In this document: piece by piece, positions 23,460 through 63,772 of the stretch | Numbering within the stretch: the first letter of the stretch is position 1 | Layout of the letters: every line of letters begins with the position of its first letter | IMG/VR virus record: IMGVR_UViG_3300046660_000716 | Span: 62,001 to 126,000 of that record | Length of the DNA stretch: 64,000 nt | Strand: one strand, 5' to 3' | Made by a program: the position numbers and the translations under genes | The notes under the pieces: generated by a model | Seen by the model: only the letters and a program-made list of their open reading frames with translations | What the model was told of the DNA's origin: nothing | Databases searched by the model: none

Positions 23460-23471
23460 AACATCCACTTA
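23460..23471 (+). promoter_or_regulatory. AACA-N6-TA, putative non-virion RNAP promoter
   Basis: AACAtccactTA between a terminator and the sigma-like gene; matches the AR9 late consensus. Confidence 0.5.
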
Positions 23472-23492
23472 GCCAAACAGAGGATCACGCTC

Positions 23493-24719
23493 ATGTCCAA
23501 CACAACGCAGGGTAAGGTCTTCCTTTCCCGAGAGTACCACAAGGTCGAGGAGGCGCTGTCGCGCCCCGGCGCCGCGGCCCGCCTGCACGCCCACATGCAG
23601 GGCGTCATCGGGTCCGACCGGCTCATGAAGGCCCTGGAGGCCACGCATCCCGGCGAGACGGTCTACTTCGGCGACAAGGAGGGCAGCGCCGACCAGGTGC
23701 CGGTTTACGAGATCTCCGGGCTGAACCCGCTCGAGGTGCGCAAGGCCATCAAGGACACCGGCGTCGTCCAGGCGTCCTGGGCGCACGCCAACAAGCCGCT
23801 GTACTGGACGATGATGATGATCATCCGCTTCCACGCGCGCCAGAAGAACACCGCCCCGACCGCGATGAAGGTCGGCTTCCGCGCCGCCGAGATCGAGGAG
23901 AACACGAAGATGGCCGTCATGTTCATGGCCACCGCCATGTACGCCGGCCTGCAGTTCCGCTACTTCCGCCGCTTTTACCAGCCGAACGCCATGGCCTACG
24001 CGATGAACACGCTGACGGACAAGTTCACGCTGAAGCAGGAGGGCACGATGATCAAGACCATCTTGACCATCGCGTGGCGCGCGCACCTCAAGTACGCCCC
24101 GGACCTGGAGAACGGCTCCGACCTGCTCCTGCTCAAGTACCTCGTCAGCATGTGGGGCCGCCTGAACGGGATGGTCAAGGCGCTGAAGAACCAGTACGAG
24201 AACACCAAGCTCGCCGGCAACTACCTCAACCAGTCCCGCGACCGCCACGACGACGGCGAGATGGTCGAGCGCGAGACGGACGGCGGGCGGGTGGAGGCCA
24301 CGGTCAACAAGGTCAACGAGGCGTTCTTCGGGGAGCCGATGCCGCCGCGCATCGTCGACATCGCCGCGCAGATGACCGACACGCCGCAGCAGAGCCTGGT
24401 GCTGGCGGTCAACGAGATCCGACAGGGCGACCCAGGCCCGGTCCAGGAGGCCATCCACATCATCGTGGAGCTCTTCTTCGAGGAGACGCGGGGCACACGC
24501 GAGGACATCAGGACGCGGAACTTCCTGTCGTTCTGCAACAGCGTGTACATGCGATCAAATACAGTGGATCAAAGAGTCGAAAAGCTCAAGGCGATCCTTG
24601 ATAAACTCCTCCGCGAGCGCAGCCCGCAGTACCTCCGCACGAACCGGGAGGCCACCAAGGGCGCGTTCCGCAAGGCCATGTACCTGACCCTGGTGCTCTA
24701 CATCCAGACCAAAGCCTAG
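23493..24719 (+). CDS. probable promoter-specificity (sigma-like) subunit of the non-virion RNAP, AR9 gp226 / phiKZ gp68-like
   Basis: YF....NAMAYAMNTLTDKFTLKQ, RLNGMVKAL, YLNQ, FLSFCNSVYMRSNT..KLKAILDKLL, FRKAMY. These follow the recalled AR9 gp226 pattern; all-helical, 408 aa. Confidence 0.7.
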   Translation: MSNTTQGKVFLSREYHKVEEALSRPGAAARLHAHMQGVIGSDRLMKALEATHPGETVYFGDKEGSADQVPVYEISGLNPLEVRKAIKDTGVVQASWAHANKPLYWTMMMIIRFHARQKNTAPTAMKVGFRAAEIEENTKMAVMFMATAMYAGLQFRYFRRFYQPNAMAYAMNTLTDKFTLKQEGTMIKTILTIAWRAHLKYAPDLENGSDLLLLKYLVSMWGRLNGMVKALKNQYENTKLAGNYLNQSRDRHDDGEMVERETDGGRVEATVNKVNEAFFGEPMPPRIVDIAAQMTDTPQQSLVLAVNEIRQGDPGPVQEAIHIIVELFFEETRGTREDIRTRNFLSFCNSVYMRSNTVDQRVEKLKAILDKLLRERSPQYLRTNREATKGAFRKAMYLTLVLYIQTKA

Positions 24720-24729
24720 GAGGGCGATT

Positions 24730-24957
24730 ATGAAACGTGGTGTCTTCAACGAAGCCGATCTGATTCGGTGCTACGCCCCGCCTAACCTTCTTTCGGTCAT
24801 GCCCGGAAACCGCGTGATGCTCCGATCGGGCGGCCCTGAGATGACCGTCTACGACGTGGCGGAGAACGGCGACGCCCTCTGCCAGTGGATGGCCGGGGGC
24901 AAGCTGGAGAAACATGCTTTCACCCTCGCCTGCCTCACGTGCTACGGTGCGCGCTAG
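24730..24957 (+). CDS. YodC/DUF2158-family protein
   Basis: GNRVMLRSGGPEMTV..CQW..F..L. Confidence 0.75.
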   Translation: MKRGVFNEADLIRCYAPPNLLSVMPGNRVMLRSGGPEMTVYDVAENGDALCQWMAGGKLEKHAFTLACLTCYGAR

Positions 24958-25494: not shown

Positions 25495-25513
25495 CCCAAC
25501 CGAAAGAGAACCG

Positions 25514-27056: not shown

Positions 27057-27211
27057 AGGGGGTGATGCCATGGGCGATAACGACCACGTGATCGGCATCT
27101 GAGCCGGCTGAGGGGCAGTCCAGCGGCCCCGCATATGGCGCCCGTCCTTGCGCAGGACGGGCACGTCAACACACTCATGGGAGCTCCGGCCGGAGCTCTC
27201 TTTTTTTTTTT
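27057..27211 (+). other. structured intergenic element (3 hairpins, terminator, 10-codon ORF)
   Basis: GATGCC..GGCATC, GGGGC..GCCCC, GCCCGTCCT-tgcgc-AGGACGGGC, GAGCTCCGG/CCGGAGCTC plus T11. Confidence 0.45.
27181..27211 (+). terminator. intrinsic terminator
   Basis: 18-bp palindrome plus T11. Confidence 0.85.
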
Positions 27212-27229
27212 GCCATTTGCGGAAGCTGT

Positions 27230-27697
27230 ATGACAGGATACATCAGAGTAGGCAACAAGCACGGCGGGAAAGAGATCCTGGCCGAGGGCGAGGCGATGGT
27301 ATCCGTCGACCGGGGGACCGACTTCGGGAACCCCTGGCCGCTGAGGGACGCGAAGGACGACGCGGCGAGGAACCTGTGCTGCGACAGGTTCGCGCGCATG
27401 GCGGATCGCGACATGGCCGTGCACGGCCCCATCTGGCGGGCGGTGCAGGAGCTGGCACGCCGCGTCATGGACGGAGAGCGCATCGTCCTGATGTGCTGGT
27501 GCACGCCGAAGCGGTGCCACGGACACTACATAGCCATGCTCGTCGAACGGGTCGTGGCGCAACTAACGGAAGCTAAAAATGAACGTATGCGGAGAGCAGT
27601 GCCGGCGCGCAGGACTGGCGACGCCGTCGAACGCCGTGGGAACGGAGGTCCAGTTCTTCGATCCAACTACCGGCTGGACCGCGACGCCGAAGACTAA
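27230..27697 (+). CDS. DUF4326-family protein
   Basis: VDRGTDFGNPW..LMCWCTPKRCHG. Confidence 0.75.
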   Translation: MTGYIRVGNKHGGKEILAEGEAMVSVDRGTDFGNPWPLRDAKDDAARNLCCDRFARMADRDMAVHGPIWRAVQELARRVMDGERIVLMCWCTPKRCHGHYIAMLVERVVAQLTEAKNERMRRAVPARRTGDAVERRGNGGPVLRSNYRLDRDAED

Positions 27698-27794
27698 GTT
27701 CGGCACCTGCCGCGAGGCGTGCAAGGCGCTGAGCGAGGTTCCCGAGGGGAAGGAGGCGCGCCTCTACGCGACGCTGGGAGAGGCCCATGGCTAA
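27579..27794 (+). CDS. hypothetical protein
   Basis: 71 aa; overlaps the DUF4326 tail; 8-nt overlap with the next gene. Confidence 0.5.
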   Translation: MNVCGEQCRRAGLATPSNAVGTEVQFFDPTTGWTATPKTKFGTCREACKALSEVPEGKEARLYATLGEAHG

Positions 27795-28530
27795 GCTGAC
27801 ACCCGACAAGCGCGCCCGGATCGAGAAGCTGGTGGTCTCGGCCTTCGCCGCCCTCGACGAAACGGGCGCGAACGCGGCCAAGTACGAGAAGGAGCTCAAG
27901 GGAATGAGCGACGCCCAGTTCACGAGGTGGCTGGACGAGTTCGTTCGCAACGAGGACAAGCACTTCTACCTGGACGTGCAGCCCTTCCACAACGAACCGA
28001 CGCTGGAGCAGATCGAGAAGGCTGCCAAGATCACCGGCACGAAGCTCCACCAGTACGTCTACTTCAAGCACGACGGCGCCCAGGGCGACCCGGTGCGCAC
28101 CGCGAAGCGCCTGCCCTGCGGCTACATCCACGTCCGCCGCCTGCAGCAGATCCTGGCCAAGAAGACGTCCTACTCGACCGAGGCCAGCAAGCGCAGCCAG
28201 CTGACAGGCCAGCTCTCAGGCGACGACGCCGTTGGCCGCCTGGCCGACGAAGAGGCGTACGCCCTCAAGACCGTCGGCGCCAACGCCATCCTGCGCGAGC
28301 TCCTGGGTCCGCGCGCCGACAACCGGGGCAAGCGCCTCGGCATGTACCACGCGATCGAGCGCGACGGCTACGTGCAGTACAAGGACCTCGTGGGCGACAC
28401 GAAGGACCAGCCGACGCTGAACTACCTCAACACGCTGCTCCTGGCGGCCGGGCTCAAGTCCGACCTCGTCGACTCGACCGAGCTGCTGCGCGTGAGCGTC
28501 GATCGCCCCATCGAAAACCAAAGGAAATGA
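27787..28530 (+). CDS. virion RNA polymerase beta C-terminal subunit (SPN3US gp244-like)
   Basis: GYIHVRRLQQILAKK..LTGQ..GRLADEEAYAL..GANAILRELLGPRAD corresponds to the RpoB C-terminus. The N-terminus YEKELKGMSDAQF and the size of about 245 aa match the small vRNAP beta-C subunit. Confidence 0.8.
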   Translation: MAKLTPDKRARIEKLVVSAFAALDETGANAAKYEKELKGMSDAQFTRWLDEFVRNEDKHFYLDVQPFHNEPTLEQIEKAAKITGTKLHQYVYFKHDGAQGDPVRTAKRLPCGYIHVRRLQQILAKKTSYSTEASKRSQLTGQLSGDDAVGRLADEEAYALKTVGANAILRELLGPRADNRGKRLGMYHAIERDGYVQYKDLVGDTKDQPTLNYLNTLLLAAGLKSDLVDSTELLRVSVDRPIENQRK

Positions 28531-30985: not shown

Positions 30986-31006
30986 CACAACCAACACGAG
31001 GATGCC

Positions 31007-34676: not shown

Positions 34677-36761
34677 ATGGCAGGATCAGTAATCAAGGAC
34701 GCAGCACAGTTCGACGGCGGGCACAAGTTCCTCGCGGAGGAGCTGCTGCAGCCGATGTCGGACAAGTGCGACGTCGGCCGCACCAACATGTGGGCCGGCC
34801 ACTTCGTCCAGGCCGTGACGCTGGACCACCCGGAGCGCCCGCGCATCTTCAGTCGCTTCGAGGACGCCATCGGTGCGTACACCACCGCCGTGAAGGTGCT
34901 GCCGGCCGACGCCGAGATCGTGGCCGTGTTCCAGAAGAACGCCCTGCAGAGCGTGTACGCGATCCGCTACGCAGACGGGAAGATGGACGTGCACTTCGCC
35001 AAGCCGGTGCGCCACCTGACCGAGAACTACGGCTACACCCTGAGCAGCCACCTGGAGGGCCGCCAGGCCGGCGAGAAGCTCCCGTCCGGCTCCGTCATCC
35101 AGAGCTGGGCCTGCACGAACGAGGAGGGCAGCTTCCAGTTCGGCCAGAACCTGCGCACCGTGTACATGAACAAGGACGGCAAGACCTACGAGGACGGCTA
35201 CATCATCGGCGAGTCCGCGGCCGACAACATGTCGCACACCTCGGTCGAGGAAGTCACGGTCGTGCTCAACGCCAACGACCTGCTCGTCAACCACTACAGC
35301 GGGAACGAGGAGCACCAGGGCTTCCCGAACGTGGGCGAGAAGATCAAGAACGGCCTCATGTCCGTCCGCCGCCGGATCAACCACGAGTCGATCCTGTTCG
35401 ACCTGGCGGCGCAGCAGCTGGGCAAGATCCACTGGGACGCCGACCAGCCGTTCTACGTCGACGGCACGGTGGTGGACATCGACGTCTACTCGAACCTGTC
35501 GGCCGAGGAGCTGGACAAGCACCCGTTCAACAGCCAGATCCTGCAGTACCACAACAAGTGGCTGGAGTTCCGCGACTGGTTCACCGAGGTCTTCAGCGAG
35601 GTCACCCAGTCCGAGGGTCCGCGCATGTACTCCGACGACGTGGCCTACTGGTGGCGCCTGTGCCGCGACACCCGCACGGAGCGGTGGCGCCACGAGCGCC
35701 GCGAGTTCGACGGCGTGGTCATCCGCTTCACGGTGGCAAAGCGCAACCCGGTCAAGGCGGGCTCGAAGCTCACCAACCGCTTCGGCGGCAAGGGCGTCGT
35801 CTCGGAGGTCCGCCCGGACCACCTGATGCCGAAGACCAAGGACGGCGTCTACGCGCAGCTGATCGTCAACAGCCTGGGCGTGGTTAACCGCCTCAACCCG
35901 GCCCAGCTGTACGAGTCCGAGGTGAACTACATCGGAGAGTGCGTGGAAGCCCAGATGCGCGCGATGCCCGGCGTCGAGGCGGCCGCGACCCACTTCCTGA
36001 AGTTCCACTCGTTCGTCGACCCCGTGCACGGTGCGTTCCTGGCCGAGCAGCCCGAGCTGTACGATCTCGTGGGCGAGATCCTGCGCGGCGAGGAGCACAT
36101 CTACATCCACCAGCCGCCCTTCTTCGGCAACATCTCGCTGGATACGCTCGAGCTCACCTACAAGGAGTTCGGCGTCGAGAAGGTGTACTACGAGGGCCTG
36201 GAGGAGCCGCAGATCCCGGGCACCAACTACTACCTGAAGCTGCGCCACGAGCCGCTGTCGAAGATGTCCGCCCGCTCGGCCAAGCACCTGTCGATCAGCG
36301 GCGTCCCGACCAAGAACAGCCGGGGCGTGCGCGGCAGCACGGAGCACCACAGCACGACGCCTATCCGCCTGGGCGAGCAGGAGCTCCAGAACTTGCTGAT
36401 AGCCAACCAGCCGGACGAGCTGAAGCGCCTGCTGCGCCTGTACGCCACCGACGACCTGTCCCGCGAAGGGGCGATCGCCGAGCTGCTGGTGCGCCAGGAC
36501 GCGTTCTCGCACGAGCGCATCGAGCCGCGCGGCACGGGCATCACCCGCCCCGTCGCCGGCCTGAAGGCGCTGCTCGAGTCCATCGGGCTCAAGCTCCAGA
36601 CCACCGGCGAGATCGTGGACGAGTCCCTGGACGACGTCCCCCTGCCTACCACCTACGCCACATTGGAGATCGAAAATGAGCATGAAGAAACCGCAGCCAC
36701 CGAGGCCGCAATTGCCGTCGAAGAGCTCGACCCAGTCGACCCAGACGCCGAAGACGAGTGA
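34677..36761 (+). CDS. non-virion RNA polymerase beta C-terminal subunit (AR9 gp089 / phiKZ gp71-73-like)
   Basis: TYEDG, GSKLTNRFGGKGVVS, IVNSLGVVNRLNPAQLYE, YYLKLRHEP.SKMSARS, IRLGEQE. Confidence 0.9.
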   Translation: MAGSVIKDAAQFDGGHKFLAEELLQPMSDKCDVGRTNMWAGHFVQAVTLDHPERPRIFSRFEDAIGAYTTAVKVLPADAEIVAVFQKNALQSVYAIRYADGKMDVHFAKPVRHLTENYGYTLSSHLEGRQAGEKLPSGSVIQSWACTNEEGSFQFGQNLRTVYMNKDGKTYEDGYIIGESAADNMSHTSVEEVTVVLNANDLLVNHYSGNEEHQGFPNVGEKIKNGLMSVRRRINHESILFDLAAQQLGKIHWDADQPFYVDGTVVDIDVYSNLSAEELDKHPFNSQILQYHNKWLEFRDWFTEVFSEVTQSEGPRMYSDDVAYWWRLCRDTRTERWRHERREFDGVVIRFTVAKRNPVKAGSKLTNRFGGKGVVSEVRPDHLMPKTKDGVYAQLIVNSLGVVNRLNPAQLYESEVNYIGECVEAQMRAMPGVEAAATHFLKFHSFVDPVHGAFLAEQPELYDLVGEILRGEEHIYIHQPPFFGNISLDTLELTYKEFGVEKVYYEGLEEPQIPGTNYYLKLRHEPLSKMSARSAKHLSISGVPTKNSRGVRGSTEHHSTTPIRLGEQELQNLLIANQPDELKRLLRLYATDDLSREGAIAELLVRQDAFSHERIEPRGTGITRPVAGLKALLESIGLKLQTTGEIVDESLDDVPLPTTYATLEIENEHEETAATEAAIAVEELDPVDPDAEDE

Positions 36762-37407: not shown

Positions 37408-37410
37408 CGA

Positions 37411-37418
37411 GATATCAT
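37411..37418 (+). promoter_or_regulatory. GATATCAT motif
   Basis: Intergenic, directly followed by a hairpin. Confidence 0.55.
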
Positions 37419-37423
37419 TGACA

Positions 37424-37468
37424 TGGACGGATGAGCCCTTTGGCTCATCCGCCATTCCTTTACTTTTT
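37424..37468 (+). terminator. hairpin with a T-rich tail
   Basis: CGGATGAGCC-cttt-GGCTCATCCG then TTCCTTTACTTTTT. Confidence 0.6.
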
Positions 37469-37483
37469 CCCGAAGGACAGAAA

Positions 37484-46039: not shown

Positions 46040-46051
46040 CAACTTGATGTT
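46040..46051 (-). promoter_or_regulatory. AACA-N6-TG, putative late promoter
   Basis: AACAtcaagtTG upstream of the minus-strand gene, divergent from CATATCAT. Confidence 0.45.
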
Positions 46052-46073: not shown

Positions 46074-46081
46074 CATATCAT
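46074..46081 (+). promoter_or_regulatory. CATATCAT motif
   Basis: Intergenic, heads the HNH-polB unit. Confidence 0.6.
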
Positions 46082-51816: not shown

Positions 51817-51830
51817 AACACTCTGATAGC
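51817..51830 (+). promoter_or_regulatory. AACA-CTCTGA-TAGC, putative late promoter
   Basis: Matches AACA-N6-TA; shares the 11-mer ACTCTGATAGC with 55106. Confidence 0.6.
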
Positions 51831-51883
51831 AAGGCCGGGCCGGAAGGTCCGGCCGCCTACCCCGATTTTTTTGAGAGGCGACA

Positions 51884-52405: not shown

Positions 52406-52415
52406 AAAGTACACA

Positions 52416-53498: not shown

Positions 53499-53510
53499 AC
53501 GGAAACCACC

Positions 53511-54062
53511 ATGGCCCTCTCAGTAACCGCCGGATTCGGCACCATCATCGCGACCGAGATCATCGGCGGCGCCCACCACCAGTCCGTCATCGTCTTCGAG
53601 AACCACTTCCGGTCGCAGGTGGAATCGCCCACGACCGCCGGCGCGGACTACAGCTCAGGCATGTACCTCGGAGCCCAGCTCTCGTTCGCGGCGGCGACGC
53701 GCGGGCCGGGCCAGTTCTCCATACTGGACGGCCTGCAGGTGATCCTGCGCGACATGCAGGCCGCGCCTGATCTGGACATCGTGTTCTACACGGACGCGCT
53801 GGACAACCCTCCGGTGGACGCGACCCACGCCGTCCTGTCGGCGGGCGACATCCTGGCCGTGACCGGCGTCCTGCGCATTCCAGGATCGGCCTTCGTCGAA
53901 CTTGGCGGCCACATGATCGCCGACGTGGCGCTGCCGCGATCGCTGGTCGTGCAGGCCGGCGCGGGCGAGGGTTCGTCCCACGCCGCGATCGTGGTCCGCG
54001 AGGACGTGACGATCCCGGCGGTCGACACCCTGGTCGTGTCCGCCGTGTTCCGCCGGGACTGA
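53511..54062 (+). CDS. hypothetical beta-rich protein, probably virion structural
   Basis: 183 aa; context. Confidence 0.75.
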   Translation: MALSVTAGFGTIIATEIIGGAHHQSVIVFENHFRSQVESPTTAGADYSSGMYLGAQLSFAAATRGPGQFSILDGLQVILRDMQAAPDLDIVFYTDALDNPPVDATHAVLSAGDILAVTGVLRIPGSAFVELGGHMIADVALPRSLVVQAGAGEGSSHAAIVVREDVTIPAVDTLVVSAVFRRD

Positions 54063-54064
54063 CC

Positions 54065-55099: not shown

Positions 55100-55102
55100 A
55101 CC

Positions 55103-55116
55103 ACAACTCTGATAGC
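55103..55116 (+). promoter_or_regulatory. ACAA-CTCTGA-TAGC, putative late promoter of the portal gene
   Basis: Same 11-mer as 51820-51830, in a 28-nt gap. Confidence 0.55.
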
Positions 55117-55127
55117 GACGACACAAG

Positions 55128-57683
55128 ATGGCAACCACTCCACAGAACGGCCGCAACCGCGGCGGCAAGCGCAACAATCCGGCCGAGAAGGCGCTCGGCC
55201 GGGCGGAGCGCTCTGCCGACAGCGCCGATCAGCTGCTGACCGGCGGGATCGAACCCGAGCTGCAGGGTGCGCGCGACCTCGACAGCGTGGTCCGCACCAT
55301 CGCCCGGCAGGTGGGCGCGGCCAACACGCGCCTGACCGGCGGCAACACGCTGGAGACCATGTCCCGCCTCAAGCAGGACACGCTGCTCTCCACCCCACTC
55401 GTGCAGCAGAACGCCTCCAACCAGATCAAGATCACCGACGGCGGCGCGACGCTGAAGGACGCGCTGGACGAGGTCGAGTCCAGCATGATCAACGAGCTCT
55501 TCGCCACGGAGAAGGGTCGGCTGGACGATTACCAGACCTACGCGCAGATCGCCGACCTGATCACCCAGGCGGGCGAGTCCATCCAGGCGTTCACCGACAA
55601 TATCGTGAGCCCGGACGACTTCACCAAGCGCGATGTGGCAGTGTTCTACGACGGCACCGACGAAGAGGGCAAGCTGATCAAGCAGGTCAAGGCCAAGGCC
55701 GACGACCTGATCAAGAAGTACATGCTGGAGGACCGCGCGGAGGAGGCCATCACCAAGGCGCTGGTCAAGGGCGACTACTTCATGGTCATCCTGAACCTAC
55801 GCCAGGAGCTCGAGGGCATCCTGAACGAGCAGGGCGCGCTGGTGGAGAACGCCCAGGCCCTGCTGGACGAGCACCGCGTGTCGCAGAAGTTCGAGGCGCA
55901 GCACGTGCCGAACCTGGAGGACCCGGACGTCAAGGGCCTCATGGAAATCATGAAGCTCGAGATCAAGGCGAGCGAGGCCAAGGGCGCCAAGGACGGAGCC
56001 CTGACCGAGAGCACGCTGGTCGCCGAGTCGTCCAAGTTCCGCGAGGAGCTGGCCGCCTACTTCAACGAGCTGCTCGTGGTCAACGAGGACGCGTCGGGCC
56101 TGGTCGGCAAGCAGGCCATGTCGATGAAGTTCGCGCAGGACCTGCCGAGCAAGCAGCGCGTCCGGGCCGGCGGCAAGATGGTCGCCCCCGGCGAGGGCAG
56201 GGGCGCCAGCCTCGCGGGCTCCAAGGTCACCGGCTCGGTGGTGAAGATGGTCCCTCCGGAGAACGTCGTCAAGCTGTACCAGGACGACACGCTGTTCGGC
56301 TACTACTTCATCGAGCTGTCCGGCCCGGACATCGCCGACTTCGCGCGCCGCGGCACGATGGACCAGACCGCCATGGTCCGCGCCATCGACCAGAACCTGT
56401 CGGTGCGCGCGCTGGGCGGCAACACGGGCGCCGTGCCGAAGGGCAAGGACGCGCTGATCAGCCGCATCATCATCAAGACGCTGAGCACGAAGCTGGGCAA
56501 CTCGAAGTACCTGAAGGACCACGAGGAGTTCGCCTCCGACGCGTACGCGATCCTGTCGCGCGCCCGCCGGGAGCGCCGCCGCGCCACCTTCACGTACGTG
56601 GCCCCGGACCAGATGGTCCACTTCACGCCGAACGGCTCTACGGCCTACGGCGAGTCCGTGCTGAGCCGCATCAAGTTCCTGTCCAAGCTGTACCTGGGCG
56701 CGATGACCAACGCGTTCATGCGCAACTCCATCCGGCGCCCCGAGCGCCTGGTGTGGTACATCGACATCGGCACGGACAACGACGGCAGCAACTCGGTCCA
56801 GAACTTCATCCGCACGATCAAGCAGCGCGAGGTCAAGTTCTCGAACCTGCGGGACATCACGACCACGATCAACCAGATCGGCGAGTTCCACGACTTCTAC
56901 GTGCCGACCTACAACGGAGAGCGCCCCGTCGACGTTGAGACGCTGAACATGGGCGCCGCCGCCGAGGTCGACAACGCCTACCTGGAGTACCTGCGCAAGG
57001 CCATCATCGGCGGCACGGGCGTCCCTGCGGCGTACCTGGGCTACTCCGAGGAGGTGGCGTTCGCCCGCTCCCTGACGATGGACAACGGCCGCTTCCTGCG
57101 CCGCGTGATCCGCAACCAGAAGCACTTCGGTGCGGCCATGACCCGCGTGCTGCAGATCCTGTGGCGCAACGAGTACATGAGCCTGGAGGAGCTGGTCGGC
57201 AAGACCAAGGACCAGTCCGCCGACGACGTGGAGCGGGCCAGCAAGGAGCGCAGCGACAAGGAGAACGCCAAGGCCGGCGTCGACCGAGCTCTGGCAGACA
57301 TCGACATCTCGAAGATCGTCGTGCGCTACCCTAGCCCGGCCACGCTGAACATGACCAACCTGGCCGACGCGATGAACCAGGGCCAACCCGTGGCCGAGTT
57401 CATCACCGACGTGGTCGGCTCCGGCGAGGAGGATGACGTCAAGAACGAGCTGAAGAAGCAGGTGCTGCAGGACCTGATGCCTCAGATCCACTGGTCGAAG
57501 TACCACGACATGCTGGACAACGCACGCAAGGCCATCGAGAAGAAGAAGGCCGGCGAATCGACGACGCCGGCCGCCGGTGGCGGCGACGGTCTCGAAGGGG
57601 GCGGCGACGGCCTCGGTGCTGCCGGCATGGATGCGGGCGGCGACGGCGGAGACACAGCCGAAGCCGACTTCCCTCCTCCGTAA
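55128..57683 (+). CDS. portal vertex protein (T4 gp20-like)
   Basis: RRPERLVWYIDIG, DFYVP..GER..DVETL, YLRKAIIGGTGVPAAYL correspond to T4 gp20 PERRVFYIDVG, EDYWLP and YF.KKL..L.VP.SR. Confidence 0.85.
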   Translation: MATTPQNGRNRGGKRNNPAEKALGRAERSADSADQLLTGGIEPELQGARDLDSVVRTIARQVGAANTRLTGGNTLETMSRLKQDTLLSTPLVQQNASNQIKITDGGATLKDALDEVESSMINELFATEKGRLDDYQTYAQIADLITQAGESIQAFTDNIVSPDDFTKRDVAVFYDGTDEEGKLIKQVKAKADDLIKKYMLEDRAEEAITKALVKGDYFMVILNLRQELEGILNEQGALVENAQALLDEHRVSQKFEAQHVPNLEDPDVKGLMEIMKLEIKASEAKGAKDGALTESTLVAESSKFREELAAYFNELLVVNEDASGLVGKQAMSMKFAQDLPSKQRVRAGGKMVAPGEGRGASLAGSKVTGSVVKMVPPENVVKLYQDDTLFGYYFIELSGPDIADFARRGTMDQTAMVRAIDQNLSVRALGGNTGAVPKGKDALISRIIIKTLSTKLGNSKYLKDHEEFASDAYAILSRARRERRRATFTYVAPDQMVHFTPNGSTAYGESVLSRIKFLSKLYLGAMTNAFMRNSIRRPERLVWYIDIGTDNDGSNSVQNFIRTIKQREVKFSNLRDITTTINQIGEFHDFYVPTYNGERPVDVETLNMGAAAEVDNAYLEYLRKAIIGGTGVPAAYLGYSEEVAFARSLTMDNGRFLRRVIRNQKHFGAAMTRVLQILWRNEYMSLEELVGKTKDQSADDVERASKERSDKENAKAGVDRALADIDISKIVVRYPSPATLNMTNLADAMNQGQPVAEFITDVVGSGEEDDVKNELKKQVLQDLMPQIHWSKYHDMLDNARKAIEKKKAGESTTPAAGGGDGLEGGGDGLGAAGMDAGGDGGDTAEADFPPP

Positions 57684-58038: not shown

Positions 58039-61000
58039 TTACGCGGTGGTCCAGGTGCCGAAGCCGCCAGTGATGTGCCAGACGTAGGTGCTGGCACCGG
58101 TCTGCACGCACGTCAGCATGACGCTGGCGTTGGTCTCCGTCGCGGTCGAGTTCGTCAGAGTGCCCGCCGCCGTGGAGTCCTGTATGGTATCAGTTCCCAC
58201 GGCTTTGATCACGAAGTTCTGAGCGTTGACCTTGAAGAAGCGCAGGGTCTGGCCCACCATCGTCGAGCCTGCAGGCAGGGTGTCGGTGATGGCGCCCGCT
58301 GCACCGCGGTTGGTCAGCATCGAGCCGACGTCCGTCGACAGCACCGTGTAGGATGCGGTTTTCGGGTTGTCGACCAGGGCCGCAGCCGCGCCGTCCGTGA
58401 TGCCGTAGCCGGCCAGGGTGGTCGGCTTGCCGGTGATGCTGGCGAAGGCAGGGGTCACGGTCACATTCGCAGCCAGGACCAGGCGGCCCTTGGAGTCGAC
58501 CGTGAAGGTCGGGATCTGGGTCGCCGAGCCGTAGGCCGCCGCCGCCACCGCCGTGTTGGCCAGAGTCAGAGCGCCCGTCGCCGCAGCCGAGCCGTCGAAG
58601 TTCGTCGTCCAGGTGGCGTCGCCGGTGATCGAGATCGCCCGAGCGGTCGCCAGCTTGGTCGCCGTGTCGGCGTTGCCCGTGACGTTGCCCGTGACGTTGC
58701 CGGTCACGTTGCCCGCGACGTTGCCCTGCAGGTTCATCTGGGCGGTGCCCACCGAGCCGCTGAAGACCTCGCCGGTGTTCGACGCGTCCGGGATGAACGT
58801 GAAGAAGCCGGTGGAGTCGTCGAAGCCGAAGTAGCCCACCTTCGCGGTGGTGCCGTTGTGCCAGCGGTACTCGATGCCGCGGTCCTTGTTGTCGTCGACG
58901 GTCGGAGCCGTGTCGCCGCCCAGGGTGAAGATAGGGTCGTCGATGGTCACGGTCGTCGAGTTGAACGTGGTCGTGGTGCCGTTGAACGTCACGTTGCCCG
59001 TGAAGGTGGTGGTGCCGTTCACGACCAGCGACGCGGCGGTCAGCGCGCCCGCGGTCGTCAGGTTGGCCGAGCCAGCCCAGGTGGACAGCGCGGTGTTCTC
59101 CACGTTGCCCAGTCCGACGGCCGCGGCGTTCAGCGCTGCCATCACCTTGTCGCCGCGGTAGTACTGCGCCGCGGTGCCAGCAGCGATGAGCGGCTGCGAG
59201 TCAGTGATGCCGTATCCGGCCAGGGTGGTCGGCAGGCCCGTGATGTTGGCGAAGGCCGGGGTCACGGTCACGTTGGCCGCCAGGACCAGGCGGCCCTTGG
59301 AATCGACCGTGAAGGTCGGGATCTGGGAGCCGGAGCCGTAGGCCGCCGCCGCCACGGCGGTGTTGGCCAGGGTCAGCGCGCCGGTGGCGTTGGCCGAGCC
59401 GTCGAAGCTGGTGGTCCAGGTGGCGTCGCCGGTGATCGAGACGCTGCGGGCGGTCGCCAGCTTGGTCGCGGTCGAGGCGTTGCCCGTGAAGCCGGCCGTC
59501 GTGTTGATGGTCAGCTTGTTGTTGACGTCGTCGTAGGCCACCGAGATGTTGGTGCCGGAGACGATGTCCAGGCGCTCGGCCGTGGTGTACGAGATCTGCG
59601 CGCTGGTGCCGTCGCCGATCGACAGCGTGTGCGTGTGGTTGGACAGCGCCGCGTCGGTGATGCCGTAGCCGGCCAGGGTGGTCGGCTTGGACGTGATGCT
59701 TGAGAACAGCGGCGTGATCGTCACCGGCGCGCCGACGCTGATGATGCGGCCCTTGGAGTCGACCGTGTACGGCGTGACCGCGGTCGCCGTCGCGTTGTAC
59801 GTGCCGGCGGCGACGCCCGATGCGGCCAGCGTCATGGCGCCCGTGGCTGCGGCGGTGCCGTCGAAGTTCGTCGTCCAGGTGCCGTCGCCGGTCATGGAGA
59901 TCGCGCGGGTCGTCGCCAGAGCCGTGGCGGTCGAGGCGTTGCCCGTGAAGCCTGCGGTCGTGTTGACCGTGAGCTTATTGGTGGCGTCGTCGTAGACCAG
60001 CGAGATGTTCGTGCCGGACACGATGTCCAGGCGATCGCTGGTCAGGTAGTTGATCTGCGTCGCGGTCCCGTCGCCGATCTTCAGCGCGTGGGTGTGCACC
60101 AGCGGCGCAGCGTCGGTGATGCCGTAGCCGCCCAGCGTGGTCGGCAGACCCGTGATGTTGGCGAACGCCGGGGTCACGGCGGTGCTACCGGCGACGGTCA
60201 GGCGACCCTTGGAGTCGACCGTGAAGGTCGGAACCAGGGCGCCCGAGCCGTAGGAGGCCGCAGCGACGCCGGTGTTGGCCAGCGTGCCGGCAGCCGTGGC
60301 GTTGGCCGAGCCGTCGAAGTTGGTGGTCCAGGACACGTCGCCGGTCATCGAGATCGAGCGGGCGTTGGCCAGCTTGGTCGCGGTGTCGGCATTGCCGGTG
60401 AAGCTCGCGCTCGAACCGATCGTGATCTTGTTGTTGACGTCGTCGTAGGCCACCGTGATGTTGCTGCCCGACACGATGTCCAGGCGGTCGCTGGTGAGGT
60501 AGTTCACCCGCGCGGCGGTCCCGTCGCCGATCGTCAGCGCGTGGGTGTGCACCAGGGCCGCGGCGTCGGTGATGCCGTAGCCGCCCAGCGTGGTGGGCTT
60601 GCCGGTCACGCTGGCGAAGGCCGGGGTGATCGTGACCGCGGCGCCGGTTGCCACGATGCGGCCCTTGGCGTCCACGGTGAACGGCGTGATCGCGGTCGCC
60701 GAGTTGTTGTACTGGGCGGCGGCGACGCCGGTGTTGGCCAGCGTCAGGGCGCCGGTCGCGGCAGCGGTGCCGTCAAAATTCGTCGTCCAGGTGGCGTCGC
60801 CGGTGATCGAGATCGCACGGCTGGTGGCCAGAGCGGTCGCAGTCGAGGCGTTACCGGTCACGGCGCCCGTCAGGTTGCCGGTGACGTTGCCCAGCAGGTT
60901 AGCCTCCAGGGTGCCCACCGCGCCGGAGAAGACCTCGCCGGCATTCACCGCGTCCGGGATGAAGGTCATGCGGCCGGTGCTTCGGTCGAAGCCGAAGAAG

Positions 61001-62892
61001 CCAACCTTGGCCGCGCCGTTGTACCAGCGGTACTCGATGCCGCGGTCCTTGCCGTCGTCCAGCACCGGAGCGGTGTCGCCGCCCAGGGTCAGGATCGGGT
61101 CGTCCAGTGTCACGGTGGTCGAGTTGACGGTGGTCGTGGGGCCGTTGAAGACCACGGCTCCGGTGACGGTCAGCGAGTCCACGGTCAGGGCACCCGCGGT
61201 CGTCAGGTTCGACGAGCCAGCCCAGGTGGACAGCGCGGTGTTCTCCACCAGACCCAAGCCGACTGCGGCCTTGTCCAGGGTCGCGAAGACCTTGTCACCG
61301 CGGTAGTACTGTGCGGCGGTGCCAGCTGCGATCAGGCCCTGCGCGTCGACGATGCCGTACCCGGCCAGGGTGGTGGGCTTGCCCGTGACGCTGGCGAAGG
61401 CCGGGGTGATCGTGACAGGAGCGCCGGTCGCGACAATGCGGCCCTTCGCGTCCACAGTGAACGGCGTCACCTGGGTCGCCGAGTTGTTGTAGGTGCCGGC
61501 GGCTACGGCGGTGTTGGCCAGGGTGGCCGCGCCGGTGGCGTTGCCGCTGCCGTCGAAGTTCGTGGTCCAGGTCACGTCGCCGGTGGACGAGATCGAGCGG
61601 CTGGTGGCCAGCTTGGTCGCGGTGTCGGCGTTGCCGGTGAAGGAGCCGCTGGTGCCGATCGTGATCTTGTTGTTGACGTCGTCGTAGCCGATGGTGACGT
61701 TGGCGCCGGAGACGATGTCGAGGCGCTCTGCGGACGTGAACGAGATCTGGCTCGCGGTGCCGTCGCCGATGGACAGGGCGTGGGTGTGGCCAGCCAGCGC
61801 CGCGTCGGTGATGCCGTAGCCGGCCACGGTGGTCGGCGTGTTGGTCACGCTGCCCCAGGCCGGGGTGATCGTGACGGCCGGGCCCACGAAGGTCAGGCGG
61901 CCCTTGGCATCCACGGTGTACGGCGACAGCTGGGTGGCCGAGTTGTTGTAGGCTCCCGCAGCGACGCCGGAGTCGCCGAAGGTGATCGCAATGTCAGCGG
62001 CGGCGTGGCCGTCGAACTGCACGGTGCCGGACGCGTCGCCCGAGACGGACAGCGCCACGGCGTTGGCCAGCTTGGTAGCGGTGGACGCATTGCCAGCCAG
62101 GGCCGCGGTCACGGTGCCGGCGGCGAAGTTGCCGCTCGCGTCGCGGTAGACCAGGGTGCTAGGCGTGTTCAGGTTGTCCGAGGCGATGACGATCTGCGGG
62201 CTCGCCGCCTGTCCGTCGCCGTTGGCCACGCTCACGCCCAGACCGGTCGCGCCGATGGTGCGCAGTGCGGCGGCGCCGTCGGCCGTGCGGGCCAGCATGC
62301 CGGTGCCGGTCAGGGCGGCGATCGCCGTCAGGTCCGAGTCCAGCGCCTGCGCGTCGGTGATGCCGTAGCCAGCGCGGGTGGTCGGCTTGCCGGTCAGGTT
62401 GGTGAACGTGTGGGTGTGGCTGTCGTTCAGCACGGTGACGGTGATCGTTGCGTCGTCGGAGCCGTCGAAGAAGACGGAGCCGGTGGCGTCGCCGCCGAGC
62501 TGGATGATGCGCGCGGTCAGCAGCTTCGTCGCGGTCGCGGCGTTGCCGACGCCCTGGCCCGAGGCCAGCAGGTCGCGCAGCGACTTCTGGTTGACGATCT
62601 GGCCGTCGGGGGACTGGCCGTCCAGGTTCGGCGCCAGCGGCACGCCTGTCAGGTGCGGCGAGTCCAGCGACGCCAGGAGTGCGAGGGCGTTCTGCAGGCC
62701 GACGATCTCCGAGATGCCGTGCGTGTGGTCGGAGTTGGCGGTCAGGATGCCGCCGGGGGTGATGCCGTCCTGGACGCGGATCTGCTTCAGATCCATGTCA
62801 ATCACGACTTCACCGAACTGGCCGATGTACGCCGCTGCCAGCTCCGTGGTGCCGCGCTTCAGGCGGATATTGCGGATTTCAGTAGTGCTCAT
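58039..62892 (-). CDS. long tail fibre protein with Mtd_N-like head and modular repeats
   Basis: IRLKRGT..GE..D..QDG.TPGG N-terminus; 8x GNAxTAT..FDG..KPTTLxGYGITD; six HTH motifs; 2x DDPI.TLGGD..DRGIEYRW. Confidence 0.9.
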   Translation of the reverse strand: MSTTEIRNIRLKRGTTELAAAYIGQFGEVVIDMDLKQIRVQDGITPGGILTANSDHTHGISEIVGLQNALALLASLDSPHLTGVPLAPNLDGQSPDGQIVNQKSLRDLLASGQGVGNAATATKLLTARIIQLGGDATGSVFFDGSDDATITVTVLNDSHTHTFTNLTGKPTTRAGYGITDAQALDSDLTAIAALTGTGMLARTADGAAALRTIGATGLGVSVANGDGQAASPQIVIASDNLNTPSTLVYRDASGNFAAGTVTAALAGNASTATKLANAVALSVSGDASGTVQFDGHAAADIAITFGDSGVAAGAYNNSATQLSPYTVDAKGRLTFVGPAVTITPAWGSVTNTPTTVAGYGITDAALAGHTHALSIGDGTASQISFTSAERLDIVSGANVTIGYDDVNNKITIGTSGSFTGNADTATKLATSRSISSTGDVTWTTNFDGSGNATGAATLANTAVAAGTYNNSATQVTPFTVDAKGRIVATGAPVTITPAFASVTGKPTTLAGYGIVDAQGLIAAGTAAQYYRGDKVFATLDKAAVGLGLVENTALSTWAGSSNLTTAGALTVDSLTVTGAVVFNGPTTTVNSTTVTLDDPILTLGGDTAPVLDDGKDRGIEYRWYNGAAKVGFFGFDRSTGRMTFIPDAVNAGEVFSGAVGTLEANLLGNVTGNLTGAVTGNASTATALATSRAISITGDATWTTNFDGTAAATGALTLANTGVAAAQYNNSATAITPFTVDAKGRIVATGAAVTITPAFASVTGKPTTLGGYGITDAAALVHTHALTIGDGTAARVNYLTSDRLDIVSGSNITVAYDDVNNKITIGSSASFTGNADTATKLANARSISMTGDVSWTTNFDGSANATAAGTLANTGVAAASYGSGALVPTFTVDSKGRLTVAGSTAVTPAFANITGLPTTLGGYGITDAAPLVHTHALKIGDGTATQINYLTSDRLDIVSGTNISLVYDDATNKLTVNTTAGFTGNASTATALATTRAISMTGDGTWTTNFDGTAAATGAMTLAASGVAAGTYNATATAVTPYTVDSKGRIISVGAPVTITPLFSSITSKPTTLAGYGITDAALSNHTHTLSIGDGTSAQISYTTAERLDIVSGTNISVAYDDVNNKLTINTTAGFTGNASTATKLATARSVSITGDATWTTSFDGSANATGALTLANTAVAAAAYGSGSQIPTFTVDSKGRLVLAANVTVTPAFANITGLPTTLAGYGITDSQPLIAAGTAAQYYRGDKVMAALNAAAVGLGNVENTALSTWAGSANLTTAGALTAASLVVNGTTTFTGNVTFNGTTTTFNSTTVTIDDPIFTLGGDTAPTVDDNKDRGIEYRWHNGTTAKVGYFGFDDSTGFFTFIPDASNTGEVFSGSVGTAQMNLQGNVAGNVTGNVTGNVTGNADTATKLATARAISITGDATWTTNFDGSAAATGALTLANTAVAAAAYGSATQIPTFTVDSKGRLVLAANVTVTPAFASITGKPTTLAGYGITDGAAAALVDNPKTASYTVLSTDVGSMLTNRGAAGAITDTLPAGSTMVGQTLRFFKVNAQNFVIKAVGTDTIQDSTAAGTLTNSTATETNASVMLTCVQTGASTYVWHITGGFGTWTTA
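58671..58730. repeat. 12-bp tandem repeat x5 (GNVT peptide repeat)
   Basis: CGTTGCCCGTGA-like unit, five consecutive copies. Confidence 0.9.
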
Positions 62893-62913
62893 GGGGTGCT
62901 TTCCTAGCAGTGG

Positions 62914-63510
62914 TTATTGGAGCTCGCCGCAGTCGATGTCGGTGCCGACCAGGGAGAAGAGCGAGTCGGACTCGGACTTGGTGTACGACGCGCCGGCCAC
63001 CTGCACCGCCACGCCGTTGATGAACAGGCCGGAGCTGTTGGCGGTCACGACGCCGGCTACGTCCAGCGTGAGGGCGTTGACGTTGCCCGCCTCGACCGTC
63101 GCCAGGAAGCGCTGCGCGTCGGCGAAGATCACCGCGCTGCCGGTGAACGCCTCCGGCATGGTGATCTTGAACGAGTCGTCGTCGACCAGCACCCGGTCCT
63201 GCCCCTGGATGATCGATCCGTCGTCGTGGTACGCCACGAAGATCACGTCGGTCGTGCCGAGGCCGTGGTTGACGGTCCACTCCGCGGACGCGATCGCCTG
63301 GTGGTGGGCCGCGCTGTTCTTCGGGTTGGTCAGCGGGAACCAGGCCGGGATTCCGGCGACCGTGGTGTAGGCCCAGATGGCGCCCTGCACCAAGCTGATC
63401 GAGTTGGGCTTCGGTTCCGGCGGAAAGTCTTCGTGGTTCGTCCCGATGATGAGCGCACCGCCGAAGTGCGCGTCGGCGCGAAAGCGCACCGTGGAATTTG
63501 TGTTGGACAT
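62914..63510 (-). CDS. tail/fibre-associated structural protein
   Basis: WTVNHGLG..V..D.G..DD.SFKI..F.GSAV motif; adjacent to the fibre gene. Confidence 0.75.
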   Translation of the reverse strand: MSNTNSTVRFRADAHFGGALIIGTNHEDFPPEPKPNSISLVQGAIWAYTTVAGIPAWFPLTNPKNSAAHHQAIASAEWTVNHGLGTTDVIFVAYHDDGSIIQGQDRVLVDDDSFKITMPEAFTGSAVIFADAQRFLATVEAGNVNALTLDVAGVVTANSSGLFINGVAVQVAGASYTKSESDSLFSLVGTDIDCGELQ

Positions 63511-63562
63511 TGAGTGCTCCGCTTAGAAGAGGTGTAGGGCGCCATAGCGGCGATCCTGTTTT

Positions 63563-63772
63563 TCAATCATCTGTTGTCCCGGATGGTGGATCTGCCTTCG
63601 GGCGGGGCGCGCCGGAGAACACGGCCTTCCCCTCCAGGACCTTCAGGGTGACCGCCAGGATTGCGTATTGCTGCGAGAAGCTCTCGGCGTCGGCCCCGGT
63701 CCGCTGGAGGCGCGCGATGTTGTCGTCGCACTTGGACAGCCAGTCCACGATCCTTGCGTTGATTGCTTTCAT
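63563..63772 (-). CDS. hypothetical protein
   Basis: Starts MKAINARI, overlapping the upstream stop. Confidence 0.6.
   Translation of the reverse strand: MKAINARIVDWLSKCDDNIARLQRTGADAESFSQQYAILAVTLKVLEGKAVFSGAPRPKADPPSGTTDD
63564..63575 (-). promoter_or_regulatory. AACA-N6-TG, possible late promoter
   Basis: AACAgatgatTG upstream of the structural gene. The TG coincides with an upstream stop codon, so it may be chance. Confidence 0.35.

What the first reader, a model, noticed from the sequence alone, without database searches (positions are those of the whole stretch)
23460..63575. AR9-type late promoter consensus AACA-N6-TR in a high-GC phage: is the genome uracil-containing or has specificity changed?
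Seen: AACAtccactTA (23460, before the sigma-like gene); AACActctgaTA (51817, head of the virion block); ACAActctgaTA (55103, before the portal, same ACTCTGATAGC 11-mer); minus-strand AACAtcaagtTG (46051) and AACAgatgatTG (63575); AACAcactcaTG (27168, upstream of the vRNAP beta-C unit). Established: AR9 nvRNAP recognises template 3'-UUGU-N6-AY-5' and needs deoxyuridine at -11/-10, and known dU phages are AT-rich. Inference: either this is a high-GC dU (or modified-T) phage, or its gp226 homolog reads thymine. Chance matches do occur (see rejected list).
Basis: partly seen in the sequence, partly recalled or inferred. Interest (0 to 1): 0.7.

Follow-up and report, generated by a model that had tools for sequence, protein, structure and literature searches.

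The report
AR9-type late promoters in high-GC phage
An uncultured 259-kb, 66 %-GC soil phage uses the same short late-gene start signal (AACA, six bases, T, then a purine) as the uracil-DNA Bacillus phage AR9, and it encodes the matching polymerase subunit and a dUTP-making enzyme, so it is probably a high-GC phage with uracil in its DNA, though nobody has measured that.

Summary
All six sequences are at the stated coordinates.

The window-wide excess (33 vs 15) is mostly codon periodicity. The intergenic signal across the 259,338-bp genome is real:
- 43 intergenic hits at N6, against 5-15 at N3-N9.
- 24 sense vs 1 antisense in co-directional gaps.
- The purine lies 21-30 nt before the ATG at 17 of 40 sites.
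- The motif sits nearest structural/virion genes (16:2), while an ATAT[C/A/T]AT motif sits nearest replication/nvRNAP genes (16:6); p = 1e-4.

The phage is a distant AR9/PBS1/phiR1-37/S6 relative with both split RNA polymerases. The gp226 homologue lies outside the window; the gene at 23493 is not it. It keeps the U-versus-T discriminating valine (AR9 V206), I207 and Y210. All 33 aligned family members have V or I there.

The genome encodes a dCTP deaminase and a homologue of the AR9 HAD nucleotidase. No ThyA, ThyX, dUTPase or UDG was found.

Verdict: genuine AR9-type late promoters (about 0.85). A dU genome is favoured over changed specificity (about 0.6) but unproven. This is a new member of a known kind.

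The parts
23460..23471 (+). Predicted late promoter AACATCCACTTA. The +1 A is at 23471, 22 nt before the ATG of the gene at 23493. A T-run lies upstream of it.
   Evidence: intergenic and in sense orientation.
23493..24719 (+). 408-aa homologue of AR9 g052 / phiR1-37 g205 ('phage structural protein'). It is not the sigma-like gp226.
27168..27179 (+). AACACACTCATG, a doubtful site. The +1 G is the first base of a GC hairpin (27179-27200) followed by T11. It lies 51 nt before a DUF4326 gene (27230-27697), which precedes the vRNAP-subunit piece.
27787..28530 (+). Virion RNA polymerase subunit piece (homologue of AR9 g078).
30993..31004 (+). AACACGAGGATG, 3 nt from the start codon and overlapping the ribosome-binding site. 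Most likely a chance match.
34677..36761 (+). Non-virion RNA polymerase beta C-terminal subunit (homologue of AR9 g089). It is reached from an ATATAAT early-type motif at 33238.
46040..46051 (-). Predicted late-type promoter AACATCAAGTTG. The +1 G is at 46040, 74 nt before the 225-aa minus-strand ORFan 45289-45966. It shares a divergent gap with an early-type motif at 46075 (+).
51817..51828 (+). Predicted late promoter AACACTCTGATA heading the 5-gene block 51884-57683 that ends in the portal gene. It is followed by a hairpin (51833-51854) and a T7 run.
   Evidence: The promoter + hairpin + T-run arrangement is conserved before the 174-aa orthologue in relative L046.
55103..55114 (+). ACAACTCTGATA. 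It is non-consensus (ACAA) and repeats the 11-mer of the 51817 site. The gap before the portal gene is 28 nt. The portal can be served by the 51817 promoter.
55128..57683 (+). Portal protein. Its best phage matches (24-29 % identity) are AR9/PBS1, BpSp, Staphylococcus S6-like phages and phiR1-37.
63564..63575 (-). Predicted late promoter AACAGATGATTG overlapping the stop codon of 63563-63772. The +1 G is at 63564, 54 nt before gene 62914-63510, which is followed by the 1617-aa fibre/decoration-like gene 58039-62892.
46075..46081 (+). One of ten early-type ATAT[C/A/T]AT motifs in the window. The others start at 5447, 6653, 15900, 24989, 26091, 29466, 30179, 33238 and 37412, all on the + strand.

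Best explanation
The intergenic AACA-N6-T-R sites are late promoters of an AR9-like jumbo phage.

Proposed mechanism (inferred by homology to AR9):
1. A virion-packaged split RNA polymerase transcribes early genes from ATAT[C/A/T]AT-N5-YG promoters. These early genes include the four non-virion polymerase core subunits and the gp226-like specificity subunit.
2. The resulting five-subunit non-virion polymerase reads 3'-UUGU-5' at -11 to -8 on the template strand. The reading pocket is formed by the gp226-type 2.1bis helix and the beta-N subunit.
3. It starts at the purine 11 nt downstream and transcribes structural, packaging and virion-polymerase genes.

Because the valine that excludes a thymine methyl group is retained, the promoters are most probably read as deoxyuridine. 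That implies a dU-substituted genome, made with a phage dCTP deaminase (dCTP to dUTP) and an AR9 g151-type nucleotidase that removes dTMP.

What is shown: the motif statistics, the gene content and the residue conservation. What is inferred: the start sites, U-dependence and the base composition of the DNA.
For: Motif:
- It matches the published AR9 consensus.
- The intergenic peak is specific to N6. AR9 itself shows the same N6 peak with the same script.
- An unbiased scan recovers it.
- Sense versus antisense is 24:1, and the +1-to-ATG distance clusters at 21-30 nt.
- The nearest promoter type differs by gene class: structural genes 16 late-type / 2 early-type, replication and nvRNAP genes 6 / 16, Fisher p = 1.2e-4.

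Conservation in relatives:
- 7 of 12 relatives carry the motif within 140 nt upstream of the sheath gene, against 1.7 expected, and other spacings give 0-2.
- The sheath and 51817-type promoters are positionally conserved in L046.
- L023 has AACA-N6-TR sites in the corresponding gaps: before its DCD gene, and in the divergent gap upstream of the GroEL block.

Machinery:
- 57 proteins are shared with AR9, including all 4 nvRNAP core subunits, 4 vRNAP subunits and gp226.
- The gp226 homologue matches PDB 7S01/7UM0 chain A with E = 1e-38.

U pocket:
- V206, I207, W208 and Y210 are conserved.
- Position 206 is V in 31 and I in 2 of the 33 aligned family members (27 metagenomic homologues, this phage, 5 cultured phages), never G, A or S.
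- gp105 R363 is conserved.
- The meaning of V206 comes from PMC9209446.

dU metabolism:
- A TIGR02274 dCTP deaminase scores 103.8 bits (cut-off 92.8) and carries an RSSxxR segment and a glutamate in its FEL segment.
- Its gene is conserved near gp226 in high-GC relatives.
- The g151-type HAD nucleotidase keeps DxDxV. Its homologues occur in only 20 of 50,697 phage records, all AR9-, S6-, phiR1-37- or LPJP1-like phages.
- No ThyA, ThyX, Zn deaminase, UDG or thymidylate kinase was found.
Against: - No transcription start data exist for this uncultured phage.
- Three small loci from high-GC relatives (4.5 kb of upstream DNA, mostly early regions) show no clear N6 peak.
- gp105 K375, which hydrogen-bonds the -10 U in AR9, aligns with Ser next to an Arg, beside an alignment gap.
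- No Ugi homologue was detected, and no dUTPase inhibitor can be searched for.
- The dCTP deaminase belongs to a different family from the Zn-dependent enzymes characterised in PBS1, phiR1-37 and DSS3_VP1. It could be a dUMP-forming bifunctional enzyme.
- The nucleotidase does not reach any Pfam NT5C threshold.
- Two of the six listed sites are weak (55103, 27168).
Confidence: 0.75

Rival explanations
1. The sites are genuine nvRNAP late promoters, but the genome contains ordinary thymine. The high-GC lineage's polymerase tolerates T at -11/-10 through changes elsewhere in the pocket. The dCTP deaminase merely feeds dUMP into host thymidylate synthesis.
For: - gp105 K375 is not conserved.
- I207 is Met in most metagenomic relatives.
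- The Dcd family differs from the characterised dU-phage deaminases, and some members of this fold are bifunctional dUMP-forming enzymes (PDB 1OGH-type hits).
- No Ugi was found.
- The genome assembled at about 195x word depth from a metagenome whose library method is not on record. That would be harder if a uracil-stalling polymerase was used for the library (inference).
Against: - Position 206 is V or I in all 33 family members. The only substitution shown to admit T is V206G.
- Discrimination at -11 in AR9 comes from the DNA backbone conformation itself.
- No thymidylate synthase, dUTPase or thymidylate kinase is encoded.
- The clade-specific dTMP-phosphatase-type nucleotidase is retained.
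- Every characterised member of this phage group has dU-DNA.
Confidence: 0.2
2. The motif is real but is read by something other than the phage non-virion polymerase, for example a host sigma factor or a phage DNA-binding regulator.
For: - No direct link between the motif and the polymerase was tested here.
- The AACA-N6-CA and AACA-N6-GA counts in intergenic DNA are also raised. That hints at compositional or leader effects.
Against: - It is identical to the experimentally defined AR9 nvRNAP consensus, including the spacing and the -1/+1 bases.
- The full cognate polymerase is encoded.
- The motif is conserved across relatives whose GC content ranges from 29 to 66 % and which presumably infect very different hosts.
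- It shows a strict sense orientation and a fixed distance to start codons.
Confidence: 0.04
3. The matches are chance or codon-usage artefacts.
For: - Most of the 33 window matches are in-frame coding patterns, and coding counts are periodic at N3/N6/N9.
- Sites 30993, 27168 and 55103 are individually unconvincing.
Against: - The intergenic enrichment is specific to N6 (43 vs 5-15).
- The scan gives z of about 10-11 against a Markov null.
- Strand bias is 24:1.
- The motif associates with structural genes.
- It is conserved in relatives.
Confidence: 0.01

Closest known systems
Late promoters of Bacillus phage AR9/PBS1, read by the gp226-containing non-virion RNA polymerase (PMC5449584, PMC9209446)
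   Same: - Same consensus (AACA at -11 to -8, T at -1, A/G at +1) and same spacing.
- The same five polymerase genes are present.
- The 2.1bis helix residues V206, I207, W208 and Y210 and beta-N R363 are conserved.
- The early-promoter architecture also matches (ATATTAT-N5-TG in AR9, ATAT[C/A/T]AT-N5-YG here).
- nvRNAP genes sit behind early-type promoters.
   Different: - The genome is 65.6 % GC, against about 28 % for AR9.
- Proteins are only 22-45 % identical.
- The phage is uncultured, from a rhizosphere metagenome.
- dUTP supply is by a dUTPase-fold dCTP deaminase instead of the Zn-dependent 'dCMP deaminase-like' Dcd.
- No Ugi homologue was found.
- beta-N K375 is not conserved.
- Start sites and U-dependence are untested.
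phiKZ non-virion RNA polymerase late promoters
   Same: A split multisubunit phage polymerase with a sigma-like fifth subunit (gp68 / gp226 family) transcribes late genes independently of the host.
   Different: The phiKZ consensus is TATG overlapping the start site, on thymine DNA (PMC7618050). It has no AACA -10-like element. This phage's specificity subunit matches AR9 gp226 and not gp68.
dU-DNA phages phiR1-37 (Yersinia), S6 (Staphylococcus) and roseophage DSS3_VP1
   Same: phiR1-37 and S6-like phages share the portal, gp226, g052 and nucleotidase homologues with this genome. All three pair a dCTP-deaminating enzyme with a dT-nucleotide hydrolase (PMC12697855).
   Different: Their deaminases are Zn-dependent. 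phiR1-37 uses a Ham1-type dTTP pyrophosphatase and DSS3_VP1 uses a YfbR-type HD phosphatase. Neither of those is found here.

Membership tests
AR9-type nvRNAP late promoter | Non-template consensus AACA at -11 to -8, a 6-nt spacer, T at -1 and a purine at +1 | tested here: met
   The intergenic peak is specific to N6, the AACA tetramer beats every one-base variant, and TA/TG are preferred. The consensus is taken from PMC5449584.
AR9-type nvRNAP late promoter | Located upstream of late (structural, packaging, vRNAP) genes, in sense orientation | tested here: met
   16 of 18 structural genes that have a detectable promoter have this motif nearest, against 6 of 22 early-type genes (Fisher p = 1.2e-4). 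Sense versus antisense is 24:1.
AR9-type nvRNAP late promoter | Transcription starts at the purine 11 nt downstream of the first A | not testable with these tools
   Only a source DNA run and an unrelated wastewater RNA run with fragments of relatives were found.
AR9-type nvRNAP late promoter | The cognate five-subunit polymerase, including a gp226-type specificity subunit, is encoded | tested here: met
   Homologues of AR9 g270, g154, g105, g089 and g226 are present. The gp226 homologue matches PDB 7S01_A with E = 1.4e-38.
AR9-type nvRNAP late promoter | Deoxyuridine is required at template positions -11/-10 | not testable with these tools
   Only the determinants could be checked. V206, I207 and Y210 are conserved, R363 is conserved and K375 is not.
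dU-DNA phage (thymidine replaced by deoxyuridine) | A phage enzyme supplies dUTP (dCTP deaminase activity) | tested here: met
   A TIGR02274 dCTP deaminase scores above its cut-off at genome 239182-239817. It belongs to a different family from the characterised phage Dcds. Its activity and product were not assayed.
dU-DNA phage (thymidine replaced by deoxyuridine) | A phage enzyme removes dT nucleotides (Dtm or Dtt) | tested here: inconclusive
   A homologue of the AR9 g151 5'(3')-deoxyribonucleotidase is present (26 % identity, E = 2e-19, DxDxV kept). No Pfam NT5C, Ham1 or YfbR hit was found. That AR9 g151 is the same protein as Dtm_PBS1 is my inference from the annotation.
dU-DNA phage (thymidine replaced by deoxyuridine) | A uracil-DNA glycosylase inhibitor (Ugi-type) | tested here: not met
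   AR9 g104 (Ugi) has no tblastn counterpart. Such small inhibitors diverge fast, so absence of a hit is weak evidence.
dU-DNA phage (thymidine replaced by deoxyuridine) | Chemical demonstration of dU in place of dT in virion DNA | not testable with these tools
   Sequencing reads report U as T. No isolate exists.
AR9/PBS1-like jumbo phage supergroup | A shared core of virion, replication and two split RNA polymerase gene sets | tested here: met
   57 of 318 predicted proteins hit AR9 by tblastn, with local synteny. The portal, gp226, g052 and nucleotidase homologues hit only this group among 50,697 phage records. Identities of 22-45 % place it far outside the genus Takahashivirus.

The most novel reading that the evidence does not exclude
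This genome represents a large uncultured clade of AR9-like jumbo phages. There are 41 gp226 homologues, and the loci fetched around gp226 and sheath homologues run from 29 % to 73 % GC. The whole clade would retain uracil-dependent, template-strand promoter recognition. Its high-GC soil members would then be the first high-GC jumbo phages with dU-DNA. They would make dUTP with a dUTPase-fold dCTP deaminase, a further independent enzymatic route to dU-DNA.
Probability: 0.5. Interest if true: 0.65.

Novelty: new member of a known kind. Interest (0 to 1): 0.5.

Why it matters
If the inference holds, uracil-DNA and the template-strand, U-specific promoter reading described for AR9 are not curiosities of a few AT-rich phages. 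They would be ancestral traits of a widespread soil and water phage clade that has tracked hosts across the whole GC range.

The high-GC background makes the promoter signal unusually clean: 17 of the 22 AACA-N6-TA copies in the genome are intergenic. That gives a ready-made promoter set for testing U versus T recognition in vitro.

The gene signature (gp226 with the conserved valine, a Dcd, and the g151-type nucleotidase) could be used to flag dU-DNA phages in metagenomes. That matters for library preparation bias and for restriction/CRISPR evasion studies.

Tried and rejected
- A portal-based search of IMG/VR found no confirmed relative.
- The sequencing-run search gave only the source rhizosphere DNA run and a wastewater RNA run holding 85-92 %-identical fragments of relatives. 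No read starts or TSS evidence came from it.
- No tRNA and no Rfam family was found in the window.
- The 'sigma-like' reading of 23493-24719 was rejected. It is the AR9 g052 homologue with no Pfam or PDB match.
- The apparent 722-nt gap at 36762-37483 is a missed ORF, not a regulatory region.
- A scan for small acidic proteins as Ugi candidates gave too many unspecific candidates and was dropped.
- The pooled spacing test on three high-GC relative loci was uninformative: N6 sense gave 4, other spacings 1-5, in 4.5 kb.
- No depletion of the motif inside genes is evident from the counts at other in-phase spacings.
- Whether the Dcd is mono- or bifunctional could not be decided from PDB matches.
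- No complex or structure prediction was run. It would not discriminate U from T.
Full report
CONTEXT. The window is bases 62001-126000 of a single 259,338-bp contig. It is an IMG/VR virus record with direct terminal repeats, rated 100 % complete, and is 65.6 % GC. The only DNA run that holds it is a rhizosphere metagenome, at about 195x word depth. I called 318 genes with a GC3-based script. It is approximate and missed at least the ORF at window 36676-37407.

WHAT THE PHAGE IS. The portal protein (window 55128-57683) finds only 26 of 50,697 phage records. The best matches (24-29 % identity) are AR9/PBS1, vB_BpuM-BpSp, Staphylococcus S6-like phages and Yersinia phiR1-37. A tblastn of all predicted proteins against the AR9 genome gives 57 hits with local synteny. 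They include:
- the four non-virion RNA polymerase (nvRNAP) core subunits (AR9 g270, g154, g105, g089; the g089 homologue is window 34677-36761);
- four virion polymerase subunits (g078, g145, g189, g264);
- the major capsid protein, sheath, terminase, tape measure and gyrase;
- the split family-B DNA polymerase;
- gp226, the promoter-specificity subunit.

The gp226 homologue lies at genome 234921-236438, outside the window. It matches PDB 7S01/7UM0 chain A with E = 1.4e-38. It has no Pfam or PDB match.

THE OBSERVATION. All six sequences are at the stated coordinates. Five match AACA-N6-TR. The window excess (33 vs 15.0 +/- 3.7) is mainly a coding artefact: hits inside genes peak at the in-phase spacings N3, N6 and N9.

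The informative signal is in intergenic DNA, which is 6.7 % of the genome:
- AACA-Nx-TR for x = 3 to 9 gives 15, 7, 6, 43, 8, 14, 5 intergenic hits. 17 of the 22 AACA-N6-TA copies in the genome are intergenic.
- A scan of all 4-mer + gap(0-10) + 2-mer patterns over 155 upstream regions, against a first-order Markov null, ranks AACA-N6-TA (17 vs 2.1) and AACA-N6-TG (23 vs 3.7) directly after an ATATCAT-type motif, terminator T-runs and the Shine-Dalgarno sequence.
- No one-base variant of AACA comes close (at most 25, against 43). The 25 belongs to ATCA, which is part of the early-type motif.
- In gaps between co-directional genes, 24 sites point with the genes and 1 against (p = 1.5e-6).
- The distance from the purine to the start codon clusters at 21-30 nt for 17 of 40 sites.
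- As a positive control, the same script on AR9 shows the same N6 peak, 117 vs 39-75.

IDENTITY WITH THE AR9 LATE PROMOTER. The published consensus is 5'-A(-11)ACA-(6N)-U-A/G(+1). It is read on the template strand as 3'-UUGU-5', and U is strictly required at -11 and -10 (PMC5449584; PMC9209446). phiKZ-type nvRNAPs use an unrelated TATG start-site motif (PMC7618050).

GENE-CLASS TEST. For each gene with an AR9 homologue I walked upstream through co-directional genes to the first intergenic AACA-N6-TR or ATAT[C/A/T]AT. My script mislabelled nvRNAP genes as structural, and I corrected that by hand.
- Structural, packaging and vRNAP genes: 16 late-type, 2 early-type.
- Replication, nucleotide-metabolism and nvRNAP genes: 6 late-type, 16 early-type.
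- Fisher p = 1.2e-4.

Sheath, terminase, capsid operon, tape measure, portal block, several 'virion protein' homologues and vRNAP subunits sit behind the AACA motif. Four nvRNAP genes, the gp226 homologue, gyrase, DnaB, SbcC/D, UvsX, ligase, primase and RNR sit behind ATAT[C/A/T]AT. That second motif has the architecture ATAT[C/A/T]AT-N5-YG, parallel to the 33 annotated AR9 early promoters (ATATTAT-N5-TG). Both tiers of the AR9 programme therefore appear to be conserved.

CONSERVATION IN RELATIVES. The gp226 homologue has 41 metagenomic homologues at 30-75 % identity and the sheath has 50.
- Loci fetched around them range from 29 % to 73 % GC.
- Within 140 nt upstream of the sheath gene, 7 of 12 relatives carry AACA-N6-TR, against 1.7 in shuffles. 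Only 2 of 5000 shuffles reach 7, and other spacings give 0-2.
- In L046 (41 % GC, sheath 72 % identical) the sheath promoter sits at the same place as here. The orthologue of the gene at 51884 is preceded by AACACTACTATA + hairpin + T-run, mirroring window 51817.
- In L023 (61 % GC), AACA-N6-TR sites precede the DCD gene and both sides of the divergent gap upstream of the GroEL block. Genome sites lie in the corresponding gaps here.
- Pooled upstream DNA of three AT-rich or mid-GC loci shows the N6 peak (17 vs 3-9). Three small high-GC loci, mostly early regions, do not (4 vs 1-5). I report that as a limitation.

THE SIX SITES.
- 23460 is intergenic, 22 nt from the ATG, and lies after a T-run. 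This is a good candidate.
- 51817 heads the five-gene portal block and is conserved in L046. This is a good candidate.
- 46040 (-) and 63564 (-) are plausible. The latter drives an operon that contains a 1617-aa fibre/decoration-like protein.
- 55103 does not fit at -10/-9. The portal can be served from 51817.
- At 27168 the start purine is the first base of a strong hairpin followed by T11. I rate this site doubtful.
- A seventh match at 30993 overlaps the ribosome-binding site and is probably chance.

URACIL OR THYMINE. In AR9 the -10 U sits in a pocket between gp226 I207 and gp105 R363. Its C5 atom is 3.9 A from the C-beta of V206. The V206G change makes the enzyme accept T, and the valine is invariant in the twelve homologues from dU phages known in 2022.
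- Here the helix reads T-R-Y-S-D-K-V-I-W-N-Y, so V206, I207, W208 and Y210 are all kept.
- Across 33 family members (27 of the metagenomic homologues, this phage and 5 cultured phages) the position is V in 31 and I in 2, never a small residue.
- gp105 R363 is kept. K375 aligns with Ser beside an Arg, next to an alignment gap, which I treat as inconclusive.

A 2025 study defines dU-DNA synthesis as a dCTP deaminase plus a dT-nucleotide hydrolase (PMC12697855).
- This genome encodes a dCTP deaminase (TIGR02274, 103.8 bits against a 92.8 cut-off). It carries an RSSxxR segment and a glutamate in its FEL segment, which match my recollection of the E. coli Dcd catalytic residues. It lies at genome 239182-239817 behind an AACA-N6-TA site.
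- The deaminase gene is conserved next to gp226 in high-GC relatives.
- The enzyme belongs to the metal-independent dUTPase-fold family, not the Zn-dependent family used by PBS1, phiR1-37 and DSS3_VP1.
- A homologue of the AR9 g151 5'(3')-deoxyribonucleotidase keeps the DxDxV motif. It sits two genes downstream of the DNA polymerase catalytic-subunit gene (adjacent in AR9). Its homologues occur in only 20 phage records, all from the AR9, S6, phiR1-37 or LPJP1 group.
- ThyA, ThyX, Zn deaminase, a separate dUTPase, UDG, thymidylate kinase, Ham1 and YfbR were not found.
- No Ugi homologue was detected.

This pattern favours a dU genome, but it is indirect.

VERDICT. The finding is real and correctly identified as AR9-type late promoters. 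It is a new, uncultured, high-GC member of a known system. The dU inference is favoured (about 0.6) over changed specificity (about 0.2-0.25), and an experiment is needed to settle it.

Noticed in passing
window 5447, 6653, 15900, 24989, 26091, 29466, 30179, 33238, 37412, 46075 (all + strand): A second, stronger intergenic motif, ATAT[C/A/T]AT-N5-YG. 30 of its 38 genome copies are intergenic. It parallels the annotated AR9 early (virion-polymerase) promoters ATATTAT-N5-TG. It precedes nvRNAP subunit genes, the gp226 homologue and replication genes.
   Followed up: partly
window 51828-51886 and 27179-27232; L046 15656-15736 (-): A predicted late promoter is followed by a strong GC hairpin and a T-run before the gene (dG -26.5 and -19.8 kcal/mol for the folded leaders). 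The 51817 arrangement is conserved in a 41 %-GC relative. This could be an attenuator, a leader structure, or a terminator that the phage polymerase ignores.
   Followed up: partly
L023-L046 (relatives): The uncultured clade spans 29-73 % GC while sheath proteins stay 56-76 % identical. For example, L026 is 40 % GC at 71 % identity and L046 is 41 % GC at 72 % identity, against 66 % GC here. That implies large, fairly recent shifts in base composition.
   Followed up: no
genome 239182-239817 (outside the window); L023 16247-16879; L024 13462-13752: A dUTPase-fold dCTP deaminase is conserved near the gp226 homologue in the high-GC relatives. AR9, PBS1 and phiR1-37 use a Zn-dependent deaminase instead. 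This looks like a non-orthologous replacement.
   Followed up: partly
window 58039-62892 (-): A 1617-aa repeat-rich protein with strong multi-copy matches to PHROG head-decoration and tail-fibre families and unusually high GC at codon position 2 (0.57).
   Followed up: no
window 36676-37407 (+): A 243-aa ORF overlaps the 3' end of the nvRNAP beta-C gene by 86 nt. My gene caller dropped it, so the apparent 722-nt gap is coding.
   Followed up: partly
window 46332-46967 (+): A predicted 211-aa gene with atypically low GC3 (0.73, against about 0.9 elsewhere). It may be a recent acquisition or a miscall.
   Followed up: no
window 46964-48814 (+) and genome 159976-161967: The family-B DNA polymerase is split into an exonuclease/partial-catalytic gene and a separate catalytic gene, as in AR9 (g132 / g152).
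   Followed up: no
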